From Okamejei kenojei (lineage: Eukaryota): a stretch of 64,000 nt of DNA. The translations under genes and the position numbers were made by a program. Below, piece by piece: positions 12,341 to 58,944 of this stretch. The notes beneath the pieces are model-generated. The model had not been told where the DNA came from, ran no database searches, and was given only the letters and a program-made list of their open reading frames with translations. Within the stretch, counting starts at the first letter, position 1. Each line of letters opens with the position of its first letter. The stretch covers positions 29,760,001 through 29,824,000 of the forward strand of contig CM069155.1 of the NCBI GenBank assembly GCA_035221665.1, given 5' to 3'.

Positions 12341-12389
12341 ATGTCTTGCTGGATCTCTCTAGTCTACGCGTTAGCGTTTTCCGCAGTTT
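12341..12389 (+). CDS. IGL: IgL cluster 1 leader exon
   Basis: ATG plus hydrophobic MSCWISLVYALAFSAV, then GTGAGT donor at 12390. Confidence 0.92.
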
Positions 12390-14576
12390 GTGAGTATTTA
12401 CTTCAACCGACATGATATTTAATCTCGAGTACGAGTAAACCTTTCTATCCGTGATATTTCTGCTGTTTCTCTGATATTAGTTAATATTCTACTCTTTTCT
12501 GTTTTGTTTTTCAGATATAAATGCGCAATTTGCAGTAAATCAGCCGTCTTCAAAATCCACATCTCTGGGACAAAACGTGGAAATAGCCTGTACCCTGTCT
12601 GGCGGCAGTTTAGGTAGTAGTTATGTTTCCTGGTACCAGCAGATTTCAGGAACGGTTCCGCGGTATTTGTTCTGGTATTACTCGGGCAGCAGCATTTACA
12701 GAGGCTCTGGAGTTTCCGAACGTTTCTCCGGATCAGTGTCAGGCAACACTGCAACATTGAAAATATCGAACGTGCAGTCGGGGGACGCAGCGGATTACTA
12801 CTGTGCTGTGTGGAAAGATGCTTTAATTTTCGGCAAAGGAACGAGGCTGGGTATTGGCAGTAAGTAAAATACCTTCTATCTTTGTGTAGACACAAAAAGC
12901 TGGAGTAACGCAGCGAGACAGGCAGCATCTCTAAAGAGATGGAAAGGGTTGGAGGAAGGAACTGCAGATGTTGTTTAAAACGAAGAGAGACACAACAAGC
13001 AGGATAGGCAGCATCTCTGGAGGGAATGAATGGGTCTGCAGTTCCTTTCTGCATATTCTATCTTTGGGTTCATGATATTGCAGTGAAAAGTAATTGGTTT
13101 TCTGTCGCTAATCGATGGTTTTTAAAAAAGCGTTTAACGCTAATATGTTCAGCGTTCGACCAAAGTCGATTTTTCTTTGGCAAATCATTAGACGTAGCTC
13201 TATCAAAGGGCTGATGCCAGGCTGGCTGTTTGTATTTTTTACACTAAATAGCTAAAATAAAAGGTATTTAAAGCAGATATTTTTTAAATTTCCGGCCACG
13301 ATCGCGTCTTTTTGGGCGAATTAGTCGACAACAGCATTGAAAGGAGTAAACGGCTGTCCAGCTGTTTTATTATTCTTAATTACTTTGCGGACGGCGAGCT
13401 AACAATTATCAAACCTGGATAAGAATTAGACGGAACGTAAAGGAACGGGAAATAACTTTAGAGGGACAAGGAATTGCAGATGCTGGTGTACAAAAAAAGA
13501 CACAAAGCTCTGGAGTGACTCAGCGGGTAGGGCAGCATCTCTGGTGAACATGGATAGGTAAGTTTCGGTTCGGGTCCCTTTTTCAAATCAGTTTTGTTTC
13601 GTGTGACATCTTATAACGCATTTTGTTTTTATGCCATTAAGCGAAAGGAATAAGATTCGCTATTCAACTTTAGAAATCTGAGCTGAATTATTACTTCAAA
13701 GAGAAGAGATGGGTCGAGAACAACAAACATATACGTTTCAGCATTAATGTAAATCATATCAACGATTATTTATAATGCGTGAAAACGATAAATTTAGCGT
13801 TGCTGCTAATCTAGTCTGTTCATCGATGGCTAAAACGGCAAAATATTCTTGTCGCTAAAATCCAACCATTAGTAACATTTCGATATCAGGTCTTAACAAA
13901 TGAACAGATTAATTAAGGAAAGGCATTCAAACAAAACTAAAGTTTTAAACGAGTTTAGTGGAACTTTGGCTGCAATGAAACCCCGCAACTGGATGGCGGG
14001 TAAAACAATCGTTTTCTTTTTAATTGTAGCTGGAGCCAATGGAAAAAATACACTGCAGATCAAATAAAAACACTGCCGAAATAATAGCTTTTACCCCACT
14101 GCCACATATTCTACTCCATTACCATAAATAGCAGTTATTTTTTGGTGTTCTCACTTGGAACGAATGCTATACCAATTGTATTTTTAACAAAGATAATATT
14201 TTAACCGAAGCAGTTCTGCTAGCCCTACTAATCTGTGACTTTATTTGAAATAGAACCTCAGCCGCCCGCGGTGTCCGTCCTTGGGCCTTCAGCGCAAGAA
14301 ATGACGGGAAAGGGAACCGCCACCCTTGTGTGTTTGGTGAACGGGTTTAATCCGGGTGCTGTGGAAATTGACTGGACTGTGGACGGCAGTGCGAGAAGTG
14401 ATGGCGTCGAAACCAGCCCAATCCAACAGGAGGCGGACAACACGTTCAGTGCGAGCAGTTACCTGACTCTGCCAGCCACAGTCTGGAACTCACACGACCT
14501 TTACTCCTGTGTGGTTAAACACGAGTCGCAGGCAAGCCCGGTGCAGGAAAACATCGCCAGGTCCGGCTGTCTGTAA
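12341..14576 (+). CDS. IGL: Ig light chain minicluster 1, germline-joined L-VJ-C (exons 12341-12389, 12515-12859, 14254-14576), lambda/type II-like C
   Basis: Spliced ORF reads MSCWISLVYALAFSAVYINA-QFAVNQPSS...C...WYQQ...DAADYYCAVWKDALIFGKGTRLGIG-KPQPPAVSVLGPS...ATLVCLV...YSCVVKHE...SGCL*. Introns are phase-1 GTGAGT/CAG and GTAAGT/TAG. Confidence 0.95.
12515..12859 (+). CDS. IGLV: IgL cluster 1 fused V-J exon
   Basis: Pyrimidine tract + CAG acceptor; V-set Cys, WYQQ and DxADYYC run directly into FGKGT; GTAAGT donor at 12860. Confidence 0.95.
14254..14576 (+). CDS. IGLC: IgL cluster 1 constant exon
   Basis: C1-set domain ATLVCLVNGFNPG...W.VDG...SSYLTL...WNSH.LYSC.VKHE with penultimate Cys for the H-L disulfide; CTAAT branch-like motif and TAG acceptor. 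Confidence 0.95.
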
Positions 14577-14790
14577 AACTTCTAGATTCCAACTAATCAA
14601 GCTGAAAAATATTTTTGCTCCGTCTTTCTTTTGTCAAAAATTGATATAAAAATATTCCCTGTTATCGACTAGCATTTGTGTTAAAATTGTCCTTTATCTC
14701 GCTGTTTGCAAACGTCATTCCATCGAAGCAACTCGTTCTGAATTGAAACTCCAATGTTATTCAATCTGTTAAATGCATTCCCAAATATTC

Positions 14791-26334: not shown

Positions 26335-26493
26335 NNNNNNNNNNNNNNNNNNNNNNNNNNNNNNNNNNNNNNNNNNNNNNNNNNNNNNNNNNNNNNNNNN
26401 NNNNNNNNNNNNNNNNNNNNNNNNNNNNNNNNNNNNNNNNNNNNNNNNNNNNNNNNNNNNNNNNNNNNNNNNNNNNNNNNNNNNNNNNNNNNN
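26335..26493. other. Assembly gap (159 N)
   Basis: Run of N; the paralogous interval in unit 1 (~10087-10412) contains the CT microsatellite. Confidence 1.
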
Positions 26494-28562: not shown

Positions 28563-28611
28563 ATGTCTTGCTGGATCTCTCTAGTCTACGCGTTAGCGTT
28601 TTCCGCAGTTT
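28563..28611 (+). CDS. IGL: IgL cluster 2 leader exon
   Basis: Identical to the cluster 1 leader; GTGAGT at 28612. Confidence 0.92.
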
Positions 28612-31253
28612 GTGAGTATTTACTTCAACCGACATAATATTCAATCTCGAGTACGATTAAACCTTTCTATCCATGACGATTTTGCTGCTTCTCTGATATT
28701 AGTTAATATTCTACTTTTTTCGGTTTGTTTTCCAGATATAAATGCGCAATTTGCAGTAAATCAGCCATCTTCAAAATCCACATCTCTGGGACAGGACGTG
28801 GAAATAGCCTGTACTCTGTCTGGCGGCAGTTTAGGTAGCAGCACCGTTTCCTGGTACCAGCAGATTCCACGAACGGTTCCGCGGTATTTGTTCTGCTATT
28901 GGTCGGGCAGCAGCATTTACAGAGGCTCGGGAGTTTCCGAACGTTTCTCCGGATCAGTGTCAGGCAACACTGCAACATTGAGAATATCGAACGTGCAGTC
29001 GGGGGACGCAGCGGATTACTACTGCGCTGTGTGGAAAGATGCTTTAATATTCGGCAAAGGAACGAGGCTGGGTATTGGCAGTAAGTAAAATACCTTCTAT
29101 CTTTGGGTCGACACAAAAAGCTGGTGTGCCGCAGCGAGACAGGCAGCATCTCTGCAGAGAAGGAAAGGGTTGGAGGAAGGAACTGCAGATGTTGGTTTAA
29201 ACCGAAGACAGGCACAACAAGCTGCATAGGCAGCATCTCTGGAGGAAATGAATGGGTCTGCAGATCCTTTCTGCATATTCTATCTTTGGGTTAATGATAT
29301 AGCAGTGAAAAGTAATTGGTTTTCTGTCGCTAATCGATGCTTCAATGAAAAAGCGTTTAACGCTAGTATGTTCAGCGTTCGACCAAAGTCGAGTTTCCTT
29401 TGGCAAATTATTAGACGTAGCTCTATCAAAGGGCCCAGTGTTAGGCCGGCTGTTTGTAATTTTTTACACTAAATAGCTAAAGTAAAGGGTATTTAAAGCT
29501 GATTTTTTTAAATTCCCTGCCACGATCGTGTCTTTTTTCGTAAATCAGTTGACAACAGCAAAGATAGGAAGAAACGGCTGTCCAACTGTTTTATTATTCT
29601 TAATTACTTTGCGGACGGCGAGCTAACAATTATCAAACCTGGATAAGAATTAGACAGAACGTAAGTGAACGGGAAATAATTTTGGAGGGACATGAAACTG
29701 CAGATGCTGGTTTTAAAAAAAGCCACAAAAAGCCATGTTCACCAGTGTTCACTCAGCGGGTCACTGGTGAACATGGATAGGTAAGTTTCGGTTCGGGAAA
29801 CTTCTTCAAATCAGTTTTGTTCCGTGTGACATCTCAAAACGCATTTTGCTGTTGTGCCATTAAGCGAAAGGAATAAGATTCGCTATTCCACTTCCGAAAT
29901 CTGAGCTGAATTATTACTTCAATGAGAAGAGACGGGTCGAGAAATGACAAACATATACGTTTCAGCATTAATGTAAATCATACCAACGACTATTTAACAT
30001 GCGAGAAAACGGTAAATTTAACGTTGCTGCAAATCTAGTCTGTTCATCGATGGCAAAAACGGCAAAAATATTCTTGTCGCTAAAATCCAACCATTAGTAA
30101 CATTTCGGTATCTGGTCTTAATAAATGAACAGATGAATTAAGGGAAGATATTTAAAGAAAAGTAAAGTTTTAAGCGAGTTTAGTGAAACTTTCGCTGCAA
30201 TGAAAACCTGCAACTGGCTGTCGGGTAAAACACTGTTTTTTTTTATTGTAGCTGAAGCCAATGGAAATAATACTCTGGAGATCAATTAAAAACACTACCG
30301 AAATAATATATGCGTATATTCTGTCCCATTGTCATAAATAGCAGTTACTTTTGGGGGATCTCACTTGGAACGAATGAATCCATGCAGGGCCGAATTAAGA
30401 CCCATATACGCCCGAAGCACTTAAAAGATGTTGGTGTCCCCATACATATGTAATTCAAAATATAAACAATAATAAACCATTAAAAAAATTATTATTTTTC
30501 TAAATGAAACAAAACTAACAGTAAGAAGGAAAATAATGTTTATTTTGTATACTTCCACTTTATTTATATTTGAAAATTTTTCTCATACTTTTTTTAATTG
30601 CAAAGTCTTTGATCAGATCCTCAAAATTAATCTTACGTAACACATCTGTTTCTATACTTAGTCGGGATAAGGGATCCAGCCTGCCTTGTTGCATAGTTGA
30701 AATTATATTTCAGATCGTATAAACCACTTCGAATATTATATTAGCAAGTTTAAAGTGATTTATTTTGTGCCGTAAACCATTTACCATTTCCCTTGATGCA
30801 CGAGCTTATTTTGCTTATTGGTTGATTTAGCCCTGAATCCATGCTATACCAACTGTATTTTTAACAAAGTTAATGTTTCAACCGAAGCAGTTCTGCTAGC
30901 CCGACTAATCTGTGACTTTATTTTAAATAGAACCTCAGCCCCCTGCGGTGTCCGTCCTTGGGCCTTCAGCGCAAGAAATGACGGGAAAGGGAACCGCCAC
31001 CCTTGTGTGCTTGGTAAACGGGTTTAATCCGGGTGCTGTGGAAATTGACTGGACTGTGGACGGCATTGCGAGAAGTGATGGCGTTGAGACCAGCCGGATC
31101 CAACAGGAGGCGGACAACACGTTCAGTGCGAGCAGTTACCTGACTCTGCCAGCCACAGTCTGGAACTCACACGACCTTTACTCCTGTGTGGTTAAACACG
31201 AGTCGCGGGCAAGCCCGGTGCAGGGAAACATCGCCAGGTCCGGCTGTCTGTAA
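28563..31253 (+). CDS. IGL: Ig light chain minicluster 2, germline-joined L-VJ-C (exons 28563-28611, 28736-29080, 30931-31253)
   Basis: Same exon sizes (49/345/323 nt) and splice sites as cluster 1; reading frame open. Confidence 0.95.
28736..29080 (+). CDS. IGLV: IgL cluster 2 fused V-J exon
   Basis: QFAVNQP...CTLSGGSLGSSTVSWYQQ...YYCAVWKDALIFGKGTRLGIG; GTAAGT at 29081. Confidence 0.95.
30385..30835 (-). mobile_element. Non-autonomous hAT DNA transposon in the cluster 2 J-C intron
   Basis: Imperfect TIRs CAGGGCCGAATTAA / TTGATTTAGCCCTG; 8-bp TSD AATCCATG (30377-30384, 30836-30843); minus-strand STMQQGRLDPLSRLSIETDVLRKINFEDLIKDFAIKK resembles a hAT dimerization-domain C-terminus. Confidence 0.88.
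30931..31253 (+). CDS. IGLC: IgL cluster 2 constant exon
   Basis: TAG acceptor ends at 30930; C1-set ORF to TAA at 31253. Confidence 0.95.
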
Positions 31254-33921: not shown

Positions 33922-34371
33922 ATAGACACATAGAAACATAGAGGAAAGCTTCAAAAGACTATTTACTGGAGTTTAGAAGGATGAGGAGGTATCTTATAGA
34001 AGCATATAAAATTATAAAAGGACTGGACAAGCTAGATGCAGGAAAAATGTTCCCAATGTTGGGCGAGCCCAGAACCAGGGGCCCAGTCTTAGAATAAAGG
34101 AGAGGGCATTTAAGACTGAGGTGGGAAAAAACATTTTCACCCAGATAGTTGTGAATTTATGGAATTCCCTGCCACAGAGGGCAGTGGAGGCCAAGTCACT
34201 GGATGGATTTAAAAGAGAGTTAGATAGAGCTCAGTGGGGCTAGCGGAGTCAAGGGATATGGGGAGAAGGCAGGGACGGGTTATTGATAGGGACACCAGCC
34301 ATGATCACAATTAATGGCGGTGCTGGCTCGAAGGGCCGATTCACCTCCTCCTGCACCTATTTTCTATGTTT
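33922..34371 (+). mobile_element. CR1 3' fragment, unit-specific
   Basis: LEFRRM...YKIIKGLDKLDAGKMFPMLG region and TTTCTATG tail; preceded by an inverted tail remnant CATAGAAACATAG. Confidence 0.75.
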
Positions 34372-36060: not shown

Positions 36061-36348
36061 AGAGGCCCACAGGAGCCGTTGGAGGAAGAGAAGGAGGGGG
36101 AGGAGCGACACCCGACCGGTAAGGATAAAAATCGAGCGCGGGGCTTGTTTTTCCAGAGGCCCACAGGAGCCGTTGGAGGAAGAGAAGGAGGGGGAGGAGC
36201 GACACCCGACCGGTAAGGATAAAAATCGAGCGCGGGGCTTGTTTTTCCAGAGGCCCACAGGAGCCGTTGGAGGAAGAGAAGGAGGGGGAGGAGCGACACC
36301 CGACCGGTAAGGATAAAAATCAAGCGCGGGGCTTGTTTTTCCAGAGGC
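36061..36348 (+). repeat. 3 x 94-bp tandem repeat in the CR1 5' UTR
   Basis: Near-identical monomers start at 36061, 36155 and 36249. Confidence 0.95.
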
Positions 36349-42300: not shown

Positions 42301-43529
42301 ATTTTTCGAGGATGTAACTAGTAGCGTGGATAAGGAGAACCAGTGGATGTGGTATATCTGGACTTCCAGAAGGCTTTCGACAAGGTCCCACATAAGAGAT
42401 TAGTATACAAACTTAAAGCATACGGTATTAGGGGTTCAGTATTGATGTGGATAGAGAACTGGCTGGCAAACAGGAAGCAAAGAGTAGGAGTAAACAGGTC
42501 ATTTTCACAATGGCAGGCAGTAACTAGTGGGTACCGCAGGGCTCAGTGCTGGGACCCCAGCTATTTACAATATATATTAATGATCTGGATGAGGGAATTG
42601 AAGGCAATATCTCCAAGTTTGCGGATGACACTAAGCTGGGGGCAGTGTTCGCTGTGAGGAGGATGCTAGGAGACTGCAAGGTGACTTGGATAGGCTGGGT
42701 GAGTGGGCAAATGTTTGGCAGATGCAGTATAATGAATGGGATAAATGTGAGGTTATCCACTTTGGTGCAAAAACAGAAAGCAGACTATTATTTAAATGGT
42801 GGCCGATTAGGAAAAGGGGAGATGCAGCGAGACCTGGGTGTCCATGGTACACCAGTCATTGAAAGTAGGCATGCAGGTGCAGCAGGCAGTGAAAAAAGCA
42901 AATGGTATGTTAGCTTTCATAGCAAAAGGATTTGAGTACAGGAGCAGGGAGGTTCTACTTCAGTTGTACAGGGTCTTGGTGAGACCACACCTGGAGTATT
43001 GCGTACAGTTTTTGGTCTCCAAATCTGAGGAAGGACATTATTGCCATAGAGGGAGTGCAGAGAAGGTTCACCAGACTGATTCCTGGGATGTCAGGACTGT
43101 CTTATGAAGAAAGACTGGATAGACTCGGTTTATTGAGAGGGGATCTTATAGAAACTTACAAAATTCTTAAGGGGTTGGACAGGCTAGATGCAGGAAGATT
43201 GTTCCCGATGTTGGGGAAGTCCAGGACAAGGGGTCACAGCTTAAGGATAAGGGGGAAATCCTTTAAGACCGAGATGAGAAAGACTTTTTTCACACAGAGA
43301 GTGGTGAGTCTCTGGAACTCTCTGCCACAGAGGGTAGTTGAGGCCAGTTCATTGGCTATATTTAAGTGTGAGTTGGATGTGGCCCTTGTGGCTAAGGGGA
43401 TCAGAGGGTATGGAGAGAAGGCAGGTACGGGATACTGAGTTGGATGATCAGCCATGATCATATTGAATGGCGGTGCAGGCTCGAAGGGCTGAATGGCCTA
43501 CTCCTGCACCTAATTTCTATGTTTCTATG
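36062..43529 (+). mobile_element. Full-length CR1 LINE (repeat 5' UTR, zinc finger + SGNH esterase ORF1, APE-RT ORF2) with nested Tx1
   Basis: ORF1 CSACNMW...CRKC at 36594 resumes at 39665 (ERLELRLD...GDSIVRG...HVGTND); ORF2 has LNARSIRNK, GDFN, KAFDKV and FADD; (TTTCTATG)2 tail; ATGA shared at both junctions; empty site near 21450. Confidence 0.93.
36711..39664 (+). mobile_element. 5'-truncated Tx1-clade LINE inserted in CR1 ORF1
   Basis: GRGTWKLN, KTPGSDGLPAE, NWRPITLLNVDYKIL, LDQEKAFDRI, GVRQGCPLSP, YMDD and a C-terminal CPRDGC...ETVAHLFTEC motif; AATAAA 39630-39635; poly(A) 39652-39664. Confidence 0.9.
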
Positions 43530-44021
43530 ATCCTGTACTTGGTTAAATAACTCCCATATGCTAGCTGTGGATATGCTCAATAACAACTGCTCACAAGCTC
43601 CTGCCTAATGACATTTTAATCTGTTTTGCTTCTGTAAACATCCAGACCAATCCTTATCCAAGCCAATATTAAACCTTGTAAAGTTGTGGTCACTATCCCC
43701 AAGTGCTCTTCCAGCATACCATCAGTCACCTGGCCAAGCTCATTTCCCAACACAAGGTGCAGTATCGTCCCTCCCGGATTCAGACTATCCATACACCGTT
43801 TAAGGCAAATTTCTTGGATATACTTCATAAATTCTGCCTCATTTAACCCCCTTGCACTGAACATAAAACAGTCAATATTGGGGAAGTTAACCATACGCAC
43901 TACAACAACACTGTAGTCCATGCATCTGTTTGCGTATCCGATCCATCTTCCGCTGATTATTTGGTGTCCCATAATATAATCCCATTGGAGAGACTGTTCC
44001 TTTGTTATTTTTAAGCACAAC

Positions 44022-47000
44022 TTCCTGTTTGGAAGAAACAGCAGCAAAGAGAAGCAGGAAAAAGCACTGATTGGCTCTAGCCCGAGTGGGAGGAGCGTTA
44101 GAAGTTAGTCAGCGGGGGAAAACAGTTGAAAAGGAGAGGCAAAGCACAGGCAGACTTAACTCACAGCTCCCGTGGGTTTTGATGAAACTGCAGCAAAGAG
44201 AAGAAGGGAAAAGCACTGATTGACTCTAGCCCGAGTGGGAGGCGAGTTAGAAGTGAGTCAGAGGGGTGAAACAGTTGAAAAGGAGATACAAAGCACAGGC
44301 AGACTTAATTCAGAGCTCCCGTGGATGTTGCAGAAACAGCAGCAAAGAGAAGCAGGAAAAAAGCACTGATTGGCTCTAGCCTGAGTGGGAGGAGAGTTAA
44401 GTCATTCAGAGGGGAAACGGTTGAAAATGAGAGGCAAAGCACAGGCAGACTTAACTCAGAGCTCCCGTGGATGTTTCAGAAACAGCAGCAAAGAGAAGCA
44501 GGAAAAAGCACTGATTGGCTCTAGCCCATGTGGGATGAGAGTTAGAAGTGAGTCAGAGGGGGAAAACAGTTTAAAACTGAGGAATTTGGTTTGTAAATTG
44601 GTAAATTAGGCAATTTATCAGTCAATATAAGCATGACGACTCTTAGGGAGCGGTAGTGAGGGAGCGGCCTTGTGGGTAAAGTGTGAGACTTTGGCTCGAG
44701 AGGCTTCGGAGAGGAGGCTACCAATCAAGGTTGAGAGGATGGAACACGGTGAACACATGTCATGGAAGATGAGACAGTGTGACGCTTGCAGAATGTGGGA
44801 GCCCAGGGACACAGATGGAGCCTCTGGCTGCTACTACTGTGGCAAGTGCGTTCAGCTTCAGCTCCTAAAGGACCGTGTTGAGGCACTGGAGAAGCAGCTG
44901 GATAACCTCAGGGCCATCCGGGAACATGAGAGTTTCCTGGACAGGACCTATAGTGAGATAGTCACGCCGAGGATACGGGAAGAACCAAGGTGTGTGATGG
45001 AGAGAAAGTGTGGAAATCGTGGAGTGCAGAAGGCCCAGGTGGCTGTGCCTAATGAAAACAGGCACGCCCTCTTGGGAAATGTCCGGGGAGATTATGTTTC
45101 CAGTCCGAGCGGCGGACACGTCAGTGGCTCCAATCCTGGAGATGGCTCGACCGGCGAGACCCACGTCGGGCGGAGCCCTAGTGGTGGGTGACGCCTTTGT
45201 CCGAGGAGTGGACAGGAGATTCTGTGGCAGCAGACAAGATGCGAGGATGGTCTGTTGCCTCCCTGTGCCAGGGTTCAGGATGTCGTGAGCCGAATTCTGA
45301 ACATCCTCGAGAGAGAAGGTGAACAGCCGGCAGTGGTTGTGCACACAGGCACAGACGACATCGGGTAGAAGAGGAAGGAGATTCTCCAACATGACTTCAG
45401 AGAGTTGGGAAGAAGACTGAAATGTCGGACTTCTAGTGTGGTTATCTCTGGATTGCCTCCAGTACCACGTGCTAGTGAGGACAGGAACAGCGAGATAGGG
45501 GATCTGAATGTGTGGCTGAGGGACTGGTGCAGAGAGCAAGGATTTAGATTTATAGACCACTGGCATCTCTTCTGGGGTAGGGGTGACCTGTACAAAAGGG
45601 ATGGGTTACACCTTAACTGGAGGGGGACCGACAATCTGGCAGGCAGGTTTGCTAGGCCTACATGTGTGGGTTTAACCTAAATAGTGGGGGGGAGGGATTG
45701 ACAAATTGGGAGTATAAAGATGGAGTTGAAGAGGAAGTGGCTACAGGAAAAATTACAAAAGATGCTCGAATTAATGGGAAGGAAAGCTTGAGAATGGAAA
45801 ACATAGTAAGGTCATGGCCAATTGCATGCGGTGCGAGGGGGGAAGTGAATACGGAGGTCAAAGTACTGCATATGAATGCACGAAGTATAAGGAATAAAGT
45901 GGACGAGCTTGAGGCTCAGTTAGAAACTGGCAAGTATGATGTTGTGGGAATTACTGAGACATGGCTGCAAGAGGGCCAGGGCTGGGAACTGAATATTCAA
46001 GGTTATACCTCTTATCGAAAAGACAGACAGTTGGGCAGAGGGGGTGGGGTTGCCCTGCTGGTGAGGAATGAAATTCAGTCCCTTGAAAAGGGTGACATTG
46101 AAACAGGAGATGTGGAGTCAGTATGGATAGAACTATGGAATTGTAAGGGTAAAACAACCCTAATGTGCCTAATCTACAGGCCCCCAAACAGTAGCCTGGA
46201 CATAGGGCGCAAGTTGAATCAGGAGTTAAAATTGGTATGTAGTAAAGGTAATGCTGTGGTTGTTATGGGAGATTTCAACATGCAGGTAGACTGGGAAAAT
46301 CATGTTGGTACTGGACGCCAAGAAAAGGACTTTGTAGAGTGCCTTCGTGATGGATTCTTTGAACAGCATGTATTGCAGCCTACCAGGGAGAAGGCAATTC
46401 TGGATTTAGTGTTATGTAATGAACCGGATTTGATAAAGGACCTCGAAGTTAATGAGCCCTTAGGAGGCAGTGACCATAACATGGTCAGGTTTAATCTACA
46501 ACTCGAGAGGGAGAAGAGTAGATCGGAGGTGTCAGTGTTGCAGTTGAATAAAAGGGACTATGGGGCGATGAGGGAGGAGCTGGCCAAAGGAGACTGGAAA
46601 GATACACTAACAGGGATGACAGTGGAACAAAAATGGCAGGTGTTTCTAGGAATAATACAGAAGGTGCAGGATCAGTTCATTCCTAGGAGGAAGAAAGATG
46701 CCAAAGGGATAAAGGGACGACCATGGCAGACAAGGGATGTCAGGGACAGTATAAAAATTAAACCGAAGAAGTACAACGTAGCAAAGATGAGCGGGAAGCA
46801 AGAGTATTGGGTAATGTTTAAAGAACAACAGAAGATAACCAAAAAGACAATACTGGGAGAATAGATGAGGTACGAAGGTAAGCAAGCCAAGAATATAAAA
46901 CAGGATAGTAAAAGCCTCTTTAGGTATGTGAAGAGAAAAAAATTAGTTAAGACCAAAGTTGGACACTTGAAGACTGAAAAAGCTGAATTTATTATGGGGA

Positions 47001-48508
47001 ACAAGGAAATGGCAGATGAGTTGAACAGGTACTTTGGATCTGTCTTCACTAAGGAGGACACAAACAATCTTCCTGATATAGAAGTGGCCAGAGGATTTGG
47101 GGTGACTGAGGAACTGAAGGAAATATACATTAGACAGGAAATTGTGTTGGATACACTGACGGGCTGAAGGCTTATATATCCCCAGGGCCTGCTGGTCTGC
47201 ATCTCCGGGTACTTAAGAAAGTGGTTCTAGAAATCGTGGATGCATTGGTGATAATTTTCTAATGTTCTATAGACTCAGGATCAGTTCCTGTGGATTGGAG
47301 GGTAGCTAATGTTATCCCACTTTTTAAGAAAGGTGGGAGAGAGAAAACGGGGAATTATAGACCAGTTAGCCTGACATCGGTGGTGGGGAAGATGCTGGAG
47401 TCAATTATAAAAGATGGGATAGCCGAACATTTGGATAGCAGTAACAGGATCGGTCCGAGTCGGCATGGATTTACGAAGGGGAAATCATGCTTGACTAATC
47501 TTCTGGAATTTTGTGAAGATGTAATAGTAAAATAGACACGGGAGAGCCTGTGGATGTAGTGTGCTTGTAACATTAGCAAATTTGCAGATGACTCAAAGCT
47601 GGGTGGCAGTGTGAACTGTGACGAGGATGCTATGTGAATACAGGGTGACTGGGACAGATTGGGGGAGTGGGCAGATGCATGTCAGATGAAGTTTAATGCA
47701 GATAAAAGTGAGGTTATCCACTTCGGTAACAAAAACAGGAAGGCAGATTACTATCTAAATGGCGTCAGGTTGGGAAAAGGGGAAGTACAACGGGATCTGG
47801 TGGTCCTTGTACATCAGTCTATGAATGTAAGCATGCAGGTACAGCAGGCAGTTAAGAAAGCGAATGGCATGTTTAACTTTATGACAAGAGGAATCGAATA
47901 TAGGAGCAAAGTCCTTCTGCAGTTGTACGGAGCCCTAGTGAGACCACACCTGGAGTATTGTGTGCAGTTTTAGTCCCCTAATTTGAGGAAGGACAGTCTT
48001 GCTATTGAAGGAGTGCAGCGTAGGTTTACAAGGTTAATTACCGGGATGGCGGGACTGTCATATCCTGAGAGAATAGAGCAGCTAGGGTTGTACACTATGG
48101 AGTTTAGAAGGATGAGTGGGTGTCTCATTGAAACATATAAGATTGCGTAAGGGCTTGGACACGCTAGAGGCAGGAATCATGTTCCCAATGTTGGGGGAGT
48201 CCAGAACCAGGTGCCACAGTTTAAGTATAAGGGGTAAGGCATTTAGAACGCAGACAAGGAAACACTTTTTCTCACAGAGAGTGGTGACTCTGTGGATTTC
48301 GCGGCCTCAGAGGGTGGTGGAGACAGGTTCTCTGGATGCTTTCAAGAGAGAGCTAAATAGGGCTCTTACAAATTGCGGAGTCAGGGGATATGGGGAGAGG
48401 GCAGGTACGGGGCACTGATTGGGGATGATCAGCCATGATCACATTGAATGGCGGTGCTTGCTCGAAGGGCCGAGTGGCCTACTCCTGCACCTATTGTCTA
48501 TTGTCTAT
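44022..48508 (+). mobile_element. Near full-length CR1 LINE of a second family, degenerate, with an internal RT deletion
   Basis: ORF1 CDACRMW...CGKC plus esterase; APE ORF 45662-46864; RT jumps from DVV to NISKFADD at ~47566; (CTATTGT)n tail. Confidence 0.92.
44035..44577 (+). repeat. About 3.7 x ~149-bp tandem repeat in the CR1 5' UTR
   Basis: Monomers start at 44035, 44184, 44333 and 44479; each carries CTGATTGG or a variant. Confidence 0.9.
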
Positions 48509-49474
48509 AAAGCTGTTTGTTAAATTGTGTCAAAGAGGGGTGCCTATATACATTTGTGTGAATTCTGGTTTACTGGTATGCCCACCAGACTATGCAAATA
48601 AAATGGGGCAATAGGGTCTCCCACCTTTTGGGGTTAGCAATGGTGTTAGACAAGGGGGAGTTTTGTTCCCAGTCCTTTTTAATGTTTATATTGATGATCT
48701 GTCCAAGCAACTGAAAGCCTGTAATACTGGGTGCATCATTGGTAATATTTTAGTGAACCATATTATGTACGCAGATGATCATGTGGTCTTTAGTCCATCT
48801 AGCGCTGGTCTCCTGCAGCTCCTTGCTATATGTTCTGTGTATGGTGTGGAACATGATATTAAATATAATGCTTGTAAGAATTATGTTATGTTCTGAAGAA
48901 CCAAAGAAGTTAAATGTCTAAAATGTCCTGATTTTAAATTGTCTGACAATAATCTTAGTGTCTGTAATAAGGTAAAATATCTTGGGCATTTGATGGCAGA
49001 ACAAATGACAGATTATGAGGATATTTATAGGCAATGGCACATGCTGTATGTACAGGCGAATATTCGCTTGCGTAAGTTTGGAGCCTGTACAGACGTGGTG
49101 AAGATGTTGCTGTTTGGAGCATGTTGCACACCACTCTACACTGCGCATCTGTGGTCGAACTACGGAAAGACAAGTTTACAGAGACTAAAGGTGCCCAATA
49201 ATAATGCCATGAGAACACTGCTAAGGAAACGTGGATGGTGTACTACTAATAACATGTTTGCGGCGTCAGGAGTCAGTACTTTAAAAGCTATCCTAAGAAA
49301 TCATATGTATAAATTCATTTGCAGGATAAATGACTCGAAAAATGTAATTATCGTGGCCTTGTCAAATATAAGGTATAGCACTGCACGCTACGAATCCCAG
49401 TTGTGGAGACATTGGTATGGCTGTCTCGTTGTAGGACATCGATCTTTTATATTCTGGATTTTAAATCATGTATT
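48509..49474 (+). mobile_element. Same RTE-X-like retrotransposon, copy 3, truncated at both ends by the CR1 and DIRS events
   Basis: ORFs 48663-48896 and 48939-49502 are homologous to copies 1 and 2. Confidence 0.8.
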
Positions 49475-52281
49475 GGCCAGTAGTATCTGTGGATTCAGAT
49501 GACGGTGGTGATTCTCCCCCAGGAGCTAAAAAGATGTGGGGTAGAATGCAACAAATGGAACACATGCTCCAGGTTTTAATACAGCAAGGGGCTAAGGCCA
49601 ATGATATTCCTCAGGCAGTTGAGCAGCAAGGACCCTATGAAGAGGATTACCTGGAATACCGCCGTGGGGAATTCCTTCCAGTGCCTATTATAGGACTGGG
49701 GGATGCCTCCCTAGACTATCAAATGGGAGATGTGGGACAGGATGCAGCTGACTCTATGTCTGGTGTCCCTGCTTATGTGCAAACACCAGAGCACAAGAGC
49801 CTTGCTCCGGGTGTACCGGACATAGCAATGTCTTTTGCTATTCCGGAGGGAACTGGTAAGCCGATGGAAGAATACCTCGCAACTAATATAAATGACTTGG
49901 TTTCTCTCCAGCTACAACTATCTGTCATGCAGGAGACAAGCAGTAAATATAAAACACCAGTTAACTGTGCCTCATTAAAAGTGCCAATGGTGAACCCAGC
50001 CGAATGGGCACCCATGAGTCCTTCCATGAGGGGGCAGGAGGTTCGTTATCAGCACGTCCTTAAATTGGTGGCGGCCACGATCACTGCATTTGGCACCATG
50101 GTCCGAGGGACCGTGTTATCTCAGTTACAGAAGGACATGTTAGGTATGATCTGTAACGTCTTTTTCGAAAGTAACTGCATTTGGAAAATTGCCATCAGGC
50201 CTACTTTAAACCAAAAGTTTGCTGCGCTCTGTAAGGCGACCAACGTCCAGTCGCCTGAACTCCTCTTTGGTTCCGATCTCGTCAAGCAAATTCGAGATAT
50301 TGACGAGGAGGCGAAAACCATGGGGCTAATGAAGCCGGCCACAGCTCGTCCGTCTATTCGGAAGCCGGGGGTCGTTTACCGCAGGTCCGATCCGGGTGCG
50401 GGGCCCAGCAGAGGGAGGCCAGGGTGGCAATGAGGGTATCCACCACGTCAGGTTGCCTATAACCCCAACACGGCCAGACAACAGTTTTCCAAACCACCGC
50501 CAGAGGTACCGGGACTTTGTATTCAGGTTACAAATTCGGGTGTGCAACCTCCTATTGGAGGTCGGTTACATTTATTTTATAATGAATGGTGTTGTATAAC
50601 GTCTGATATCTTTATACTAAATACTGTGTCGGAGTCCACCATTGAGTTTATCTCAGGGATAGATCCACCTGTCCAGCATAAGCCTTGTAAAGTGTTGGTG
50701 TTTTCTGTTCCGGAGACTGAGCAAATCAATGTGGAGATTCAGAATTTGTTCCGTAAAGGTGTGATTGAAAAAGCATTTCATCATCCTCAACAATTTGTGT
50801 CTAATATTTTTCCCAGACCCAAAAAAGATGGTGGTTGTCGAGTAATTCTGGATCTCACTCAATTGAATACTTCAGTTCTCTATAAGCATTTTAAAATGGA
50901 CACATTCGTTACTGCAAAGCTGCTGATGTCCCAGGTTGTTATATGGCCACCATTGATTTACAAGATGCTTATTATTCGGTGCCAATTCATGTTGATTATC
51001 GCAGATACTTGAAATTTAATTGGATGGGACAGCTGTGGCAATATAGAACATTGCCTAATGGATTAAGTTCTGCACCTAGGTTATTTACTCAATTGGTGAA
51101 ACCTGTGCTGGGGCAATTGAGGGCCCACAATCACATTGTTATGGCCTATTTAGATGATATCTTAATTGTCGGCAACACTACAGAGTCAGCTGCAGACTCT
51201 GTTACAGCAACCAAGAATCTCTTCGAATCATTGCGATTTTTGGTCCATCCACTTAAGTCCAAGTTACAGCCAACCCAACAGATTGAGTATTTGGGGTTTC
51301 TTCTGGATTCAGTTCATATGACAGTTACATTACCAGCAGCCAAGGTAGTAGATATTGTTAATGTCTCTATTGGTCTTACTTAACCCCTTTATCCTTCCAT
51401 CCGAGACGTTGCGAAGGTCATTGGGAAATTGGTAGCAGCCTTCCCTGCAGTACAGTTCGGACCTTTGCATTATCAACATTTGCAAAGAGCAAGGGAACAA
51501 GCATTGAAACACAATGGAGGTCAATTTGATCGGCTTATGCAGTTACCCACTACGGCTCTGGCAGAATTGCAGTGGTGGATTGTTAATGTTAGCCAAGCCA
51601 CCAATTACATTTTGGTGGACGAACCTTCAGTGATTTTACAGACTGATGTTAGCGCTCTCGGATGGGGGGCTACAGACACAGAGTCTAGCTGTGGGGGTAG
51701 ATGGACTGAGCAAGAGGACTTGCTTCTTCACACACATGGTATTAATTGCCTGGAATTATTGGGTGCTTTTTATGGGTTAAAAGCATATTTCTCCACAATG
51801 TCAGATTTCCACGTTCAACTCCAGATTTATAACACCACAGCTGTGGCATATATTAATCATATTGTTGCTAGATTTGGGTTGCCAGATATCGATCTCTTTG
51901 CATCAAGACTGAATCACTGGTTGCCTAAATATGACTCCTGGGAGCCAGATGCAGGTGCAGTAGATGTGGATGCGTTCTCGTTACACTGGGGACACTCATC
52001 TTTTATGTGTTTCCTCCATTATGCCTGATTCCAAAATGTCTTACTAAAATAGAGCGTGACTCCACCAAAGGAGTTTTGGTGGTCCCAGATTGGCCAACAC
52101 AATCATGGTTCCCATTGGTACTGAGAATGATGGCACAGCCATTCATGCACATTCCCAGCGGCAGTCATTTGTTGGTGCATCCGGTTACAGGAGAAAGTCA
52201 CCCATTATATGACCATATCAATTTGTTGGTCTGCAGGTTCTGACCAGACCATTTCAAGGCCTTGGATTATCGAACAGGACC

Positions 52282-53210
52282 ATGGAGGTTATGACTGCAG
52301 GGTGGAGAACTAGCACTAAAAAACAATACCTCATGCACATTAAGAAATGGGAATGCTTCTGTGTACAGTCTAATATATCGTATGATACTGCTAGTATATG
52401 TGATGTGTTGGAGTTCCTTGCTACTTTGCATTTTGATGAGCACCTTAGTTATAGTGCTATTAACACTGCTCGCAGTGCTTTGTCCTCTTATTTAGGGCAG
52501 TCTTCAGCACGACAACCTATCGGGTCTCATCCATTGGTATCCAGGTTCATGAGAGGAATTTTTAACAAAAACCCTCCTCAGCCCGATACACAGCAATCTG
52601 GGATATCAGTATAGTTCTCACACTGCTTTGGCAATGGGCTCCAATTGCGTCCTTATCTTTGCAAAAATTGACTCTTAAAGTGGTTATGTTAATGGCGTTG
52701 GTTTCAGCACAACATGTCCAAACATTGTACTTGTTAAGAATAGATTATATGCATTTTTCTCAAGATGATGTTACATTTTATGTCTGTGATTTACTCAAAC
52801 CAAGTAGACCAGGAAGGTCAGGAATCAAGGTGACGTTTAAAGCATATCCTGTTGACCAACTGTTATGTGTAGTTAAACATTTAACCCAATATATTGCGTT
52901 AACAAGGAGTCTGAGAGGTTCTGAGACAGGACTGCTCATTAGTCACAAAAAGCCATATAAGCAAGTGTCAGTAAAAACTATTTCTAGATGGTTGAAACAG
53001 GTTCTCAGTTCTGCGGGTATCGACACTGATGTGTTTAAATCTCACTCCACCAGGGCGACGTCTACATCCGCGGCGAAGGCTCAGGACGTGCCGCTAGATC
53101 AAATCCTCGCGGCCGCAGGGTGGTCCAGAGAGTCAACTTTTTCTCGTTTCTATGATAAACCTGTTCAGGCAGAGCCACGTTTTAGGCCTGCTGTTTTGGG
53201 TACCATTTAA
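52282..53210 (+). pseudogene. DIRS tyrosine recombinase (frameshifted near 52580)
   Basis: SAM-like LSYSAINTARSALS; catalytic HSTR, AAGW and TFSRFY; the first catalytic Arg reads His (SAQHVQ). Confidence 0.85.
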
Positions 53211-53443
53211 TTTTATTGCTTTGTTTATATCACTTATTGTTTGTAATTTCCCCCTGGGACAGAGGGGTCATTACTCTGTTTGTTATTAATAAAATCGTTA
53301 TTGAATTATTCATGCAATGCTCAATATCTTCTTTATTGTACTACTGTGTCAACCGAAGCAGCTTGTCCTATGGAGTGCATCTGGGGCATGCAAACACAGA
53401 GCTTTGAAATCTTCACATAGTCACTCACGTGACTCCGAAGTAA

Positions 53444-53741
53444 AATAGTAAGATTAAACGAGAACTTACCAGTTCGAAGTTAGATCCTTATTTTATGAGG
53501 AGTGACGTTGAGGGATTACGTGCCCTCCGCTCCCACCCTCATAATCTAAGAAATCATCTGGTAGTTCTAGTCTTCTACGAGCCTTACTATGTTACTTTTG
53601 TTTTCTGTGTTTTCACCCCGCTGCATTGAAGTATGACGCGCATGCGCCTGGCAGGCCTTCTTCATGTAATCACTCAACGTCACTCCTCATAAAATAAGGA
53701 TCAAACTTCGAACTGGTAAGTTCTCGTTTAATCTTACTATT
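53444..53741. repeat. 79-bp inverted repeat (53444-53522 vs 53663-53741): DIRS internal complementary region and right terminus
   Basis: 76/79 reverse-complement identity by manual alignment. Confidence 0.9.
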
Positions 53742-55215
53742 CTCTGTGGCAAAAAAAAACAATCAGCAGAACAATCAATGGTATAAATAAAGTAATATGA
53801 CTGTGTCTGCTACATCAGAGATCAGATCATATGAAATTTAAATATATTGTAAGGCAATCAGAACCAGAACCAATTCTGCCTACTCTCTCTTTTCAGTTAG
53901 CTAGCCTTCCATTCACGATAGCATGTGACCTCTAGTATATGCATCATTTTCCTTCTTTGGACAATGCACGATAATTCTTCACGGTATTCCAATACATTAG
54001 CCAAACGTTGCCTGCCGAGTTGCTGGACCACTTCTGCACAAACGCAAGTGATAGTTTTAATATTCAATAATATTAACATTTCCAAATATCCTACTATGAC
54101 GCTTATTCGCGTCAAATTTGATCCAAAGCAGCCAATGAAATTTGATCCAAAGCAGCTACTTCGGCAAAATACCTCTAATATCATTTGTGATCACAGGCCT
54201 GTGAAAGGAATGGACGTGGTGGATAAAAGAATATCTAGGAGTGCTTTCTGTGCCAGTGCTATATCCACTGAAAATAAGTGATGCCAGGTAAGACGATGAA
54301 GCATCAGTGTGCTGATATTTTGAGGGTACGAAGCCATTGCATTGTACCCTTAAAGTATGCATAGGGAGGTGTAAGAAAAATCCCGAAATCAGGTTTCCGA
54401 ATTGCAGGAAGGCCGATTTCAGTAACATTGTAAGAAGTAAGTTCTGGAATGGTATTCCTAGTGGATTGGAGCTGTATCTTCGCCAAAAGGACTGCATTAA
54501 TTCCAGGGAAGGTGTTCCTTAACGAATAAAGAGTCCACATCACATCCCTATATTTAATGTATTAGGGATCATAGTCTTCTGGCCTTTCATCTTTACCTGA
54601 AATTGCACTGCTACATAATCTCCGGGTTAACCTACGGGAACAGATTGCTTCTCGACCTGGCTGCCCTGGTAATGCTACCCCTCGCTGAGCCATCACAATG
54701 TATGCAATTTTGCTCCAACCGAGCAATTTGGAAGCGCGCTTCGCTTGCAGGAAACATTCCACACTGTTTGTTAGTCATTAACCCCGTTATTCTTCAGCTG
54801 TGGCTTCTATGCAATGTACATCTTCCCTGCGTAAAACGATAAAACAATATTTAAATGCCTAATCTTATTTATTTAAGAGAATATCTATATTGCTTTAATA
54901 TTTCACTTCCATTAATTTGTTAATGTGATAAACGTCTACTTCATTCCCAAAGTGCTAGAGTAATTCAGCAGATCGGGCAGCATCTTTGGAGGACATGGAT
55001 ATGTTATGCTTTGGGTGGGGACCCTTTTCCAGAGTCGAAAGAAGGTTCGCGATCCGAAATGTCCTTACGAGACCATCTAATTGTGCGTTTTAATGAAGAT
55101 TCCAGCATCTCACAGTCGCATCTCCTTGAACGTCACAACCCCGTTCTGTTGAACATTTCATTACAAATGTTAATCTTTTGAGACTGTCAATCTGCATGTC
55201 CACTCCTCCCCCCCC

Positions 55216-56723: not shown

Positions 56724-56772
56724 ATGTCTTGTTGGATCTTTCTAGTCTATGCGTTAGCGTTTTCCGCAGATA
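56724..56772 (+). CDS. IGL: IgL cluster 3 leader exon
   Basis: MSCWIFLVYALAFSAD; GTGAGT at 56773. Confidence 0.9.
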
Positions 56773-58944
56773 GTGAGTATTGACTTCTACCGACATGACA
56801 TTTAATCTCGAGTACGATTAAATCTTTCTATCCGTGATATTTCTGCTGTTTCTCTAATATTAGTTAATATTCTACTTTTTTCTGGTTTGTTTTCCAGATC
56901 TAAATGCGCAATTTGCAGTAAATCAGCCGTCTTCAAAATCCACATCTCTGGGACAGAGCGTGGAAATACCCTGTACTCTGTCTGGCGGCAGTTTAGATAA
57001 CAGAGCGATTTCCTGGTACCAGCAGATTCCAGGAACGGTTCCGCGGTATTTGATCTACTATTACTCGGGCAGCAGCATTTCCAGAGGCTCGGGAGTTTCT
57101 GAACGTTTCTCCGGATTAGTGTCAGGCAACACTGCAACATTGACAATATCGAACGTGCAGTCGGAGGACGCAGCGGATTACTACTGTGCTGTGTGGAATG
57201 ATGCTTTCGTCTACGGCAAAGGAACGAGCCTGGGTATTGGCAGTAAGTAAAATACCTTCTATCTTTGGGTTAGACACAAAAAGCTGGTGTGACGCAGCGA
57301 GACAGGCAGCATCTCTGGAGAATTACAGAGTTATGAGGAAGTTACTGCAGGTTGGTTTAAACCGAAGATAGACACGACAAGCTGGATAGGCAGCATCTCT
57401 GGAGGGCATGAATGGGTCTGCAGTTCCTTCCTGCATATTCTATCTTTGGGTTAATGATATTGCAGTGAAAAGTAATTGGTTTTCTGTCGCTAATCGATGG
57501 TTCAAAGAAAAAGTTTTAACGCTAATATGTTCAGCGTTCGACCAAAGCCTAGTTTCCTTTGGCAAATTATTCAAAGGGGCTGATTCTCGGCCGACTGTTT
57601 GTATTTTTGACACTAAATAGCTGAAATAAAAGATATTTAAAGCTGGTATTTTTTAAATTCCCGGCCATGATCGAGTATTTTTGGCAAATTAGTTGACAAC
57701 AGCAATGAAAGCACTACACGGCTGTCCAGCTGTTTTATTATTCTTAATTACTTTGTGGACGGCGAGATAACAAATATCAAACCTGGATAAGAATTAGACC
57801 GAACGTAAGGAAACGGGAAATAACTTTGCAGGGACAAGGAACTGCAGATGCTGATTTATAAAAAAAGACACAAAGCTCTGGAGTGACTCAGCGTGTAGGG
57901 CAGCATCCCTGGAGAACATGGATAGGTGACTTTCGGTTCGGGTCCCTTCTTCAAATCAGTTTAGTTCCGTGTGACATCTTATAACGCATGTTGCTGTTGT
58001 GCCATTAAGCGAAAGGAATAAGATTCGCTATTCAAACTTCAGAAATCTGAGCTGAATTATTACTTCAAAGAGAAGAGACGGGTCAAGGAAAAACAAACAC
58101 ATACGTTTCAGGATTAATGTAAATCATATCAACGACTATTTAAAATGCGAGAAAACGGTAAATTTAACGTTGCTGCAAATTTAGTCTGTTCATCGATGGC
58201 CAAAACGACAAAATATTCTTGACACTAAAATACAACCATTAGTAACATTTCGGTATGTGGTCTTAATAAATGAACAGATGAATTAAGGGAAGGTATTTAA
58301 ACAAAACTAACGTTTTAAGCGAGTTTAGTGGAACTTTGGCTGCAATGAAAACCCACAACTGGCTGTCGGGTAAAACACTCTTTTTTTTTGTATCTGAAGC
58401 CAATGTAAATAATACTCTGGAGATCAAATAAAAACACTGCCGAAATAATATATTTTACGCTACTGCGTATATTCTGTCCCATTGCCATAACTAGCAGTTA
58501 TTTTTTGGAGATCGCACTTGGAACGAATGAATCCATGCTTTACCAACTGTATTTTTAACAAAGATGTTTTAACCGAAGCAGTTCTGCTAGCCCTACTAAT
58601 CTGTGACTTTATTTTGAATAGTACCTCAGCCCCCCGCGGTGTCCGTCCTTGGTCCTTCGGCGCAAGAATTGACGGGAAAGGGAACCGCCACCCTTGTGTG
58701 TTTGGTGAGTGGGTTTAATCCGGGTGCTGTGGAAATTGAGTGGACTGTGGACGGCAGTGCGAGAAGTGATGGCGTCGAAACCAGCCCAATCCAACAGGAG
58801 GCGGACAACACTTTCAGTGCGAGCAGTTACCTGACTCTGCCAGCCACAGTCTGGAACTCACACGAGCTTTACTCCTGTGTGGTTAAACACGAGTCGCGGG
58901 CATGCCCGGTGCAGGGAAACATCGCCAGGTCCAGCTGTCTGTAA
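56724..58944 (+). CDS. IGL: Ig light chain minicluster 3, germline-joined L-VJ-C (exons 56724-56772, 56898-57242, 58622-58944)
   Basis: Same exon sizes and splice sites; open frame; J motif reads YGKGT. Confidence 0.92.
56898..57242 (+). CDS. IGLV: IgL cluster 3 fused V-J exon
   Basis: ...PCTLSGGSLDNRAISWYQQ...YYCAVWNDAFVYGKGTSLGIG; GTAAGT at 57243. Confidence 0.93.
58622..58944 (+). CDS. IGLC: IgL cluster 3 constant exon
   Basis: TAG acceptor 58619-58621; C1-set ORF ending SSCL*. Confidence 0.94.

What the first reader, a model, noticed from the sequence alone, without database searches (positions are those of the whole stretch)
12341..58944. Tandem array of three intact, germline-joined VJ immunoglobulin light-chain clusters from one joining event
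Seen: in all three genes the YYC of V runs straight into the J FGxG motif with no RSS or spacer, yet the leader intron and the 1.4-1.9 kb J-C intron are present, so these are not retrocopies. All VJ exons are exactly 345 nt with an 8-residue CDR3 (AVWKDALI, AVWKDALI, AVWNDAFV). Established: cartilaginous fish have cluster-type Ig loci, and germline-joined L genes are attributed to RAG activity in germ cells. Inference: one ancestral germline V-J join was amplified by ~14-kb tandem duplication, giving an inherited, RAG-independent L-chain repertoire.
Basis: partly seen in the sequence, partly recalled or inferred. Interest (0 to 1): 0.8.

Follow-up and report, generated by a model that had tools for sequence, protein, structure and literature searches.

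The report
Pre-joined skate lambda light-chain genes
Three neighbouring antibody light-chain genes in a skate-like genome have their V and J pieces already fused in inherited DNA; this is real, but it is the textbook state of lambda (type II) light-chain genes in sharks and skates.

Summary
The + strand carries three complete leader / VJ / C light-chain clusters. Each has a 49-nt leader exon, a 124-125-nt leader intron and a 345-nt exon in which V runs in frame into J. A J-C intron of 1394, 1850 or 1379 nt and a 323-nt C exon follow. All splice sites are GT..AG and all frames are open. No RSS-like site occurs anywhere in the window, and there are no orphan V, J or C pieces.

Three corrections apply:
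- The third J motif is YGKG, not FGKG.
- The spacing is 16.2 kb and 28.2 kb (the latter swollen by LINE-like inserts), not about 14 kb.
- The copies are old, with 83-95% noncoding identity.

The N gap (26335-26493) lies in intergenic DNA 2.07 kb upstream of cluster 2 and touches no exon.

V and C are lambda-like. One public run covers only the exons, and one of its contigs starts exactly at the predicted C-exon acceptor, so the genes appear to be spliced and expressed.

Reviews state that all lambda (type II) genes are germline-joined in every cartilaginous fish studied, so the kind is already known. A single old join followed by duplication of the unit is the most economical reading. The scan noted the same arrays in at least five other windows of this genome.

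The parts
12341..12389 (+). cluster 1 leader exon (49 nt, split leader, donor GTGAGT)
12515..12859 (+). cluster 1 fused VJ exon, 345 nt; CDR3 AVWKDALI followed by FGKGTRLGIG; donor GTAAGT
   Evidence: Pfam V-set E 3.8e-16; best solved relatives are human lambda V-J
12860..14253 (+). cluster 1 J-C intron, 1394 nt, holding two copies of a very high-copy interspersed repeat (about 12887-13100 and 13466-13560)
   Evidence: depth table and loose ends
14254..14576 (+). cluster 1 C exon, 323 nt, phase 1, stop TAA at 14574-14576; ATTAAA at 14791
   Evidence: Pfam C1-set E 1.5e-25; aligns to human C-lambda; a contig of the exon-only run X18 starts exactly at 14254 with 0 mismatches (table 8, record 4)
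26335..26493 (.). assembly gap (159 N, length estimated) in intergenic DNA between clusters 1 and 2; not filled or looked up
28563..28611 (+). cluster 2 leader exon, identical to that of cluster 1
28736..29080 (+). cluster 2 fused VJ exon, 345 nt; CDR3 AVWKDALI followed by FGKG
30375..30841 (+). 467-nt insertion in the cluster 2 J-C intron, which accounts for its length of 1850 nt against about 1390 nt in the others
30931..31253 (+). cluster 2 C exon, 323 nt
33920..54155 (.). spacer between clusters 2 and 3, enlarged by retroelement insertions (about 36062-43527, 44022-48505 and 49476-54155) between backbone blocks shared with the other units; reverse-transcriptase ORF at 37105-38331, endonuclease ORF at 45662-46864
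56724..56772 (+). cluster 3 leader exon (5 of 49 nt differ from clusters 1 and 2)
56898..57242 (+). cluster 3 fused VJ exon, 345 nt; CDR3 AVWNDAFV followed by YGKG (Tyr in place of the conserved J Phe)
58622..58944 (+). cluster 3 C exon, 323 nt, with an extra Cys (RACPVQ)

Best explanation
These are three neighbouring units of a large tandem array of lambda-type (type II / NS3-like) immunoglobulin light-chain miniclusters in a skate or close relative. In each unit V and J have been one exon in inherited DNA since before the units duplicated.

Each cluster is an ordinary three-exon gene: split leader, VJ exon, C exon. It is transcribed from its own upstream region and spliced leader-to-VJ and J-to-C, so it yields a complete light chain with no RAG cut.

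Diversity cannot come from junctions. It comes from the inherited differences between the many clusters, which lie mostly in CDR1, CDR2 and the junction, and, according to the literature, from somatic hypermutation.

Shown here: the anatomy, the absence of RSS, the homology of the units and of their junctions, lambda-like V and C, and RNA-like exon-only coverage with the predicted C-exon acceptor.

Inferred: the join was made once by RAG in a germ cell of a distant ancestor, and the proteins pair with heavy chains and are hypermutated.
For: - Anatomy and open frames.
- Domain families: V-set and C1-set.
- Closest solved relatives: human lambda V-J and C-lambda. The C-terminal Cys is penultimate and the J-C seam reads G-K-P-Q-P, as in lambda chains.
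- No RSS-like site in 64 kb.
- Exactly three leaders, three VJ exons and three C exons, with no orphan segments.
- Junction alignment without indels: c1 and c2 differ by one silent base, and c3 differs at 4 of 24 CDR3 bases plus the Phe-to-Tyr codon.
- The whole units are homologous, including both introns and more than 10 kb of spacer.
- Exons are better conserved than introns, and C exons have pN/pS of 0.18-0.50.
- Public runs from another sample of the same organism, and runs labelled as two other organisms, cover exons and introns. They show no listed joint or loose end at 12790-12845.
- Run X18 covers the leader, VJ exon, C exon and 3' UTR but not the unique intron sequence. It holds a contig that begins at 14254 after 30 letters that do not match the intron.
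[quoted passage not shown] Germline joins derive from split genes through RAG-like processing (PMC2193156).
Against: - No split lambda gene from a relative was available, so the V and J shares of the joint and any P or N nucleotides could not be reconstructed.
- The isotype was assigned by similarity to human lambda, not by a tree that includes shark type I-IV sequences.
- The reads tool returned only short contigs. None of the listed pieces visibly bridges the V-J joint, and the kind of run X18 is not on record.
- c3 shows pN/pS of about 1-1.5 and Tyr at the J Phe, so it may be drifting rather than working.
- No canonical octamer lies within 400 nt upstream of any leader.
- The organism's identity as a skate comes from earlier scan notes, not from my own test.
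Confidence: 0.9

Rival explanations
1. Independent joins: each cluster (or the c1/c2 lineage and the c3 lineage) was joined separately by RAG in germ cells after the clusters had duplicated. The junctions look alike only because near-identical V and J ends were joined without N addition.
For: c3's junction is its most divergent stretch: 5 differences in the 27 nt from CDR3 to the Phe/Tyr codon, against about 7.5% elsewhere. Lee et al. found at least several independent joins in nurse shark NS4 (PMC2193156). A scan note on a neighbouring window mentions a 6-nt junction difference between paralogues (unverified).
Against: The exon length (345 nt) and CDR3 length are identical, there is no indel, and 20 of 24 CDR3 nt are shared even in the most distant pair. 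No split copy, RSS or V-J spacer remnant exists anywhere in the window. The whole isotype is joined in every species studied (PMC5192425), whereas recurrent joining, as in NS4, leaves a mix of split and joined genes.
Confidence: 0.07
2. Never split: the VJ exon is primordial, descended from a V-type exon that the RAG transposon never invaded, rather than from a re-joined gene.
For: Non-rearranging single-exon VJ genes do exist in cartilaginous fish (UrIg and UrIg2, PMC12227049). No split lambda gene is known in the group (PMC5192425).
Against: V, J and C here align along their whole length with the rearranging lambda chains of mammals, including the J motif and the J-C seam. The gene has the single-C light-chain architecture, not the multi-C UrIg one. 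Where split and joined genes coexist, the joined ones nest within the split ones (PMC2193156). This is established knowledge and was not tested here.
Confidence: 0.02
3. Artefact: somatically rearranged alleles from lymphocyte-rich tissue were assembled, or cDNA-derived retrocopies were mistaken for genes.
For: None beyond the general possibility. The tissue used for the assembly is unknown to me.
Against: Leader and J-C introns are present, so these are not retrocopies. Three separate loci carry near-identical joints. Somatic joins differ from cell to cell and would not form an assembly consensus. Runs from another sample and from other organisms hold the same exons and introns.
Confidence: 0.01

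Closest known systems
Germline-joined lambda / type II (NS3) light-chain clusters of elasmobranchs (sandbar shark lambda genomic clone, Hohman et al. 1993; skate type II, Rast et al. 1994; nurse shark NS3), as cited in PMC2193156, PMC5192425 and PMC4279169
   Same: L-VJ-C minicluster; V and J fused in frame in germline DNA; no RSS; lambda-like V and C; multiple copies; expressed.
   Different: Nothing in kind. What this window adds is long-range context: head-to-tail units about 16 kb apart, old and roughly equidistant copies, and spacers swollen by LINE-like insertions. I did not compare sequences with the published clones, because none was available through the tools.
Skate (Raja/Leucoraja erinacea) type I / sigma-2 light-chain clusters, at least 89 of them and all germline-joined (Anderson et al. 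1995, PMC2192082)
   Same: [quoted passage not shown]
   Different: A different isotype. The genes here are lambda-like by V, J and C.
Nurse shark NS4 (kappa / type III) germline-joined genes (Lee et al. 2000, PMC2193156)
   Same: Joined VJ exon inside an otherwise normal cluster, attributed to RAG activity in germ cells.
   Different: In NS4 only about 10% of genes are joined, through several independent events with different joints, and split relatives allow the joints to be reconstructed. Here every copy seen is joined and the joints are homologous.
UrIg / UrIg2 non-rearranging VJ genes (PMC12227049)
   Same: Single-exon VJ domain with a split leader, and no rearrangement.
   Different: UrIg proteins have three C domains, form homodimers and are made in liver. 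The genes here have one C1-set exon and a light-chain C-terminal Cys.

Membership tests
Cartilaginous-fish Ig light-chain minicluster | [quoted passage not shown] | tested here: met
   Three units of 2.2-2.7 kb from start to stop codon, each with a 49-nt leader exon, a 124-125-nt leader intron, a VJ exon and a C exon
Germline-joined (VJ) light-chain gene | V and J contiguous and in frame in non-rearranged DNA, with no RSS or spacer | tested here: met
   The 345-nt exon runs from FR1 through YYC and an 8-codon CDR3 to F/YGKGT..GIG and a GT donor. There are 0 RSS-like sites in 64 kb. The evidence that this is germline DNA is the assembly consensus at three loci plus public runs from another sample. 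Non-lymphoid DNA as such was not tested.
Germline-joined (VJ) light-chain gene | Not a processed retrocopy: introns retained | tested here: met
   Leader intron and J-C intron present with GT..AG ends in all three
Lambda (type II / NS3) isotype | V, J and C group with lambda rather than with kappa, sigma or sigma-2 | tested here: inconclusive
   The best solved-structure matches of the VJ exon are human lambda V-J domains (E to 1e-28 per domain), and the C exon aligns end to end with human C-lambda (74 bits). No tree with shark type I-IV sequences could be built, because the word search returned no relatives in its length range.
Lambda (type II / NS3) isotype | All members of the isotype are joined in the species | tested here: inconclusive
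   All three copies in this window are joined and no split piece is present. Other windows are known only from unverified scan notes.
Functional Ig light-chain gene | Transcribed and correctly spliced | tested here: inconclusive
   Run X18 covers exons and the 3' UTR but not unique intron sequence. One of its contigs starts at the predicted acceptor 14254 with 0 of 149 mismatches to c1, and another ends at the VJ exon start. The run's kind is not on record, and the splice joints themselves were not among the rows shown.
Functional Ig light-chain gene | Conserved structural residues: the two Cys and the Trp of V, the FGXG of J, the two Cys of C and the C-terminal Cys | tested here: met
   All are present in c1 and c2. 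c3 has YGKG in place of FGKG and an additional Cys in C.

The most novel reading that the evidence does not exclude
The inherited differences between clusters may be a selected, germline-encoded combining-site repertoire rather than neutral drift. These differences are two junction types (KDALI-F and NDAFV-Y), the CDR1/CDR2 differences, and pN/pS at or above 1 for c3 against c1 and c2. On this reading the repertoire is kept diverse across a light-chain array of more than 1 Mb by diversifying selection or by exchange between clusters. The full array could then be read as a fossil record of how a vertebrate replaces junctional diversity with copy diversity.
Probability: 0.12. Interest if true: 0.45.

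Novelty: already known. Interest (0 to 1): 0.2.

Why it matters
Germline-joined light chains are the classic exception to the rule that antibody V regions are assembled somatically, and they bear on how RAG acted in germ cells. This window does not change that picture. It gives a clean, base-level example with long-range context: a unit of about 16 kb, old equidistant copies, and spacers grown by retroelements. Such context is still scarce; a 2025 paper notes that the genomic distribution of these miniclusters 'is not well known' (PMC12227049). Its value is as annotation and as raw material for a census of the whole array, not as a discovery.

Tried and rejected
- The word-based protein search with the c1 VJ exon found nothing. 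Its length filter (63-200 aa) excludes full-length light chains, and the collection seems poor in vertebrate Ig. This says nothing about relatives.
- I did not run the large representative search.
- The full spliced protein was never joined or searched.
- Three papers could not be read in full. Anderson 1995 is held as abstract only. Hohman 1993 and Criscitiello & Flajnik 2007 are not held.
- The three-way site-pattern analysis for gene conversion gave a near-trichotomy. The one long run (c1 = c3 at 13442-13560) lies in a high-copy intronic repeat where c2 carries a divergent copy, so it is not good evidence of conversion. The long c2 = c3 run 3' of about 14870 is where c1's downstream sequence ceases to be homologous.
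- The octamer search upstream of the leaders found no match with at most 1 mismatch within 400 nt, apart from one reverse-orientation near-match at -240 in c3.
- The reads tool was dominated by the intronic repeats, so its joint and loose-end tables were filled with repeat junctions rather than splice joints.
Full report
**What is there**

A six-frame motif scan finds three V-type reading frames on the + strand that run from FR1 through WYQQ and YYC into a J-like motif. It also finds three C-type frames ending in ...C-V-V-K-H...C-L-stop. Reading the DNA and modelling the exons gives three genes with the same plan.

| Cluster | Leader exon | VJ exon | C exon |
|---|---|---|---|
| c1 | 12341-12389 | 12515-12859 | 14254-14576 |
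| c2 | 28563-28611 | 28736-29080 | 30931-31253 |
| c3 | 56724-56772 | 56898-57242 | 58622-58944 |

- Leader exons are 49 nt, VJ exons exactly 345 nt and C exons 323 nt.
- Leader introns are 125, 124 and 125 nt. J-C introns are 1394, 1850 and 1379 nt.
- Donors are GTGAGT or GTAAGT, and acceptors are pyrimidine-rich and end in AG.
- The phases fit: one base of the leader plus two of the VJ exon, and one base of J plus two of C. All three frames are open to a TAA stop.
- The extra length of c2's J-C intron is a 467-nt insertion at 30375-30841.

**Is it more than chance, and is anything else there?**

Pfam scores the three VJ exons as V-set (E 4e-15 to 5e-19) and the three C exons as C1-set (E about 1e-25). 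A tblastn of the exon translations against the whole window finds exactly three leaders, three VJ exons and three C exons. Nothing else scores below E 0.2, so there are no orphan V, J or C pieces.

I scanned both strands for a CAC-anchored heptamer (at most 1 mismatch), a spacer of 12 or 23 (plus or minus 1), and a nonamer (at most 2 mismatches). The scan finds no site in 64 kb, against 0.75 expected from shuffles. In any case only eight codons lie between the YYC Cys and the J motif, which leaves no room for a spacer.

**The gap**

The only N run is 26335-26493. It lies 11.8 kb downstream of the c1 stop codon and 2,069 nt upstream of the c2 start codon. It sits in spacer DNA whose flanks are collinear, in the same order and orientation, with the corresponding spacer of the neighbouring units. 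No exon, intron or frame depends on it. It only makes the c1-to-c2 distance an estimate. I did not fill it or look its letters up.

**Corrections to the observation**

- The J motif of c3 is YGKG (TAC GGC AAA GGA), not FGxG.
- The VJ-to-VJ spacing is 16,221 nt and 28,162 nt, not about 14 kb.
- The self-comparison shows that window 1-12,000 is homologous to 17,989-28,090. The unit is therefore about 16.2 kb, and another cluster should lie just before the window.
- The c2-to-c3 spacer holds the same backbone blocks in the same order. Three insertions (about 36.1-43.5, 44.0-48.5 and 49.5-54.2 kb) push them apart. These insertions carry reverse-transcriptase and endonuclease ORFs and have a different base composition.

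**Which light chain?**

The VJ exon's best solved relatives are human lambda V-J domains, aligned from FR1 to the end of J. The C exon aligns end to end with human C-lambda, including the penultimate C-terminal Cys.

This is a resemblance to lambda, not a tree with shark type I-IV sequences. I could not obtain those sequences: the word search returned nothing within its length range. The joined three-exon protein was never assembled or searched. Exons were searched separately by reference.

**One join or several?**

The three VJ exons align without any gap.
- In the 24-nt CDR3, c1 and c2 differ by one silent base (ATT/ATA).
- c3 differs from c1 at four bases (AAA/AAT, TTA/TTC, ATT/GTC) and in the next codon (TTC/TAC).

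The joints sit inside units whose leader intron, J-C intron, upstream 1.2 kb and downstream flank are all homologous at 83-95%. Separate joins would require the same V-J spacer to be removed at the same nucleotides three times and to leave no split copy behind. One join before the duplications is much simpler.

The three copies are close to a trichotomy: the three possible site patterns are about equally frequent in most segments. They are not young. The scan's notes, which are unverified, report the same kind of array in at least five other windows, from 443 kb before to 689 kb beyond this one. The triplet is therefore a sample of a much larger array, and the join is not a local event.

Two reviews state that all lambda (type II) genes are germline-joined in every cartilaginous fish studied (PMC5192425; PMC4279169). 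That points to a join older than the species. I could not test this directly.

**Constraint**

Exons are better conserved than introns: VJ 92-95% and C 94-97%, against 86-90% for the J-C intron.

| Comparison | Exon | pN/pS |
|---|---|---|
| c1 v c2 | VJ | 0.32 |
| c3 v c1 or c2 | VJ | 1.05-1.48 (similar in CDRs and frameworks) |
| all pairs | C | 0.18-0.50 |

c3 also carries Pro in FR1, Leu in FR3, Tyr at the J Phe and an extra Cys in C. The numbers are small. c3 may be diversifying or may be drifting, and its frame is intact.

**Expression and germline status**

Public runs were found that hold the c1 stretch. When four were laid on 12200-14900, three covered exons and introns alike. These were X5 (another sample and study of the same organism) and X6 and X9 (other organisms).

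X18, a small run of the same organism, covered the leader, VJ exon, C exon and 3' UTR. Its depth was zero in the unique intron bins (13110-13382, 13656-13837 and 14020-14201), which is the pattern of RNA.
- One X18 contig matches c1 from exactly 14254, the predicted acceptor, to 14402 with no mismatch. It is preceded by 30 letters that do not match the intron.
- Another X18 contig ends at 12517, at the VJ exon start, and runs on for 113 unmatched letters.
- X18 coverage of the 3' UTR ends near 14759, just before the ATTAAA at 14791.

This supports splicing as modelled, but there are limits:
- The run's kind is not on record.
- The splice joints themselves were not among the rows shown.
- The contigs are short.
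- No listed piece visibly bridges the V-J joint. I see only continuous depth there, with no listed joint or loose end.

A somatic origin is excluded on other grounds. Three loci share the joint, and somatic joins would not form an assembly consensus.

**How it works**

Each cluster is a ready-made light-chain gene that is transcribed, spliced twice and translated, with no RAG step. This much follows from the anatomy shown here.

Two further points come from the literature and were not tested here. The join was made by RAG in germ cells (Lee et al. 2000, PMC2193156). Diversity comes from the many inherited copies and from hypermutation (Anderson et al. 1995, PMC2192082; reviews above).

No canonical octamer lies within 400 nt upstream. 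A conserved ATTGG sits at -143 in all three clusters. The promoter is otherwise uncharacterised.

**Comparison with what is known, and verdict**

This is the known state of lambda/type II light-chain genes in elasmobranchs, described from genomic clones in the 1990s. The window adds long-range context that a 2025 paper still calls poorly known (PMC12227049), but no new mechanism.

It is wrong on the size of the unit, and it understates the age and scale of the event. Interest is low.

Noticed in passing
window 12887-13100 and 13466-13560 (and the matching places in the c2 and c3 J-C introns): Two stretches of the J-C intron belong to an extremely abundant interspersed repeat. Summed contig depth there is 10^5-10^6 in every run laid, against about 10^2 beside them, with hundreds of loose ends at fixed boundaries. 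c2's copy at 29666-29780 is only about 65% identical to those of c1 and c3.
   Followed up: partly
window 36062-43527, 44022-48505, 49476-54155: Three insertions enlarge the c2-c3 spacer. They are GC-rich (up to 55%) and strongly GC-skewed, and they carry a reverse-transcriptase ORF (37105-38331) and an endonuclease ORF (45662-46864). A near-identical (96.7%) inverted copy of 42260-43529 lies at 1308-2599.
   Followed up: partly
window 56898-57242 and 58622-58944: Cluster 3 departs from the other two by replacement changes in frameworks as well as CDRs (pN/pS 1.05-1.48), Tyr at the conserved J Phe and an extra Cys near the C terminus. Whether it is expressed is unknown.
   Followed up: partly
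window 12100-12340, 28320-28562, 56480-56723: The 300 nt upstream of each leader is 91-99% conserved between clusters, better than the surrounding spacer. It has no canonical Ig octamer. An ATTGG (reverse CCAAT) lies at -143 in all three.
   Followed up: partly
window 12419-13054, minus strand: A 211-codon antisense ORF overlaps the c1 VJ exon and the start of the intron. It is probably a by-product of codon composition and was not examined.
   Followed up: no
window 14870-16934: About 2 kb downstream of c1 has no counterpart downstream of c2 or c3, whose flanks continue to match each other at 87-93%. This is an insertion in unit 1 or a deletion in the others.
   Followed up: no
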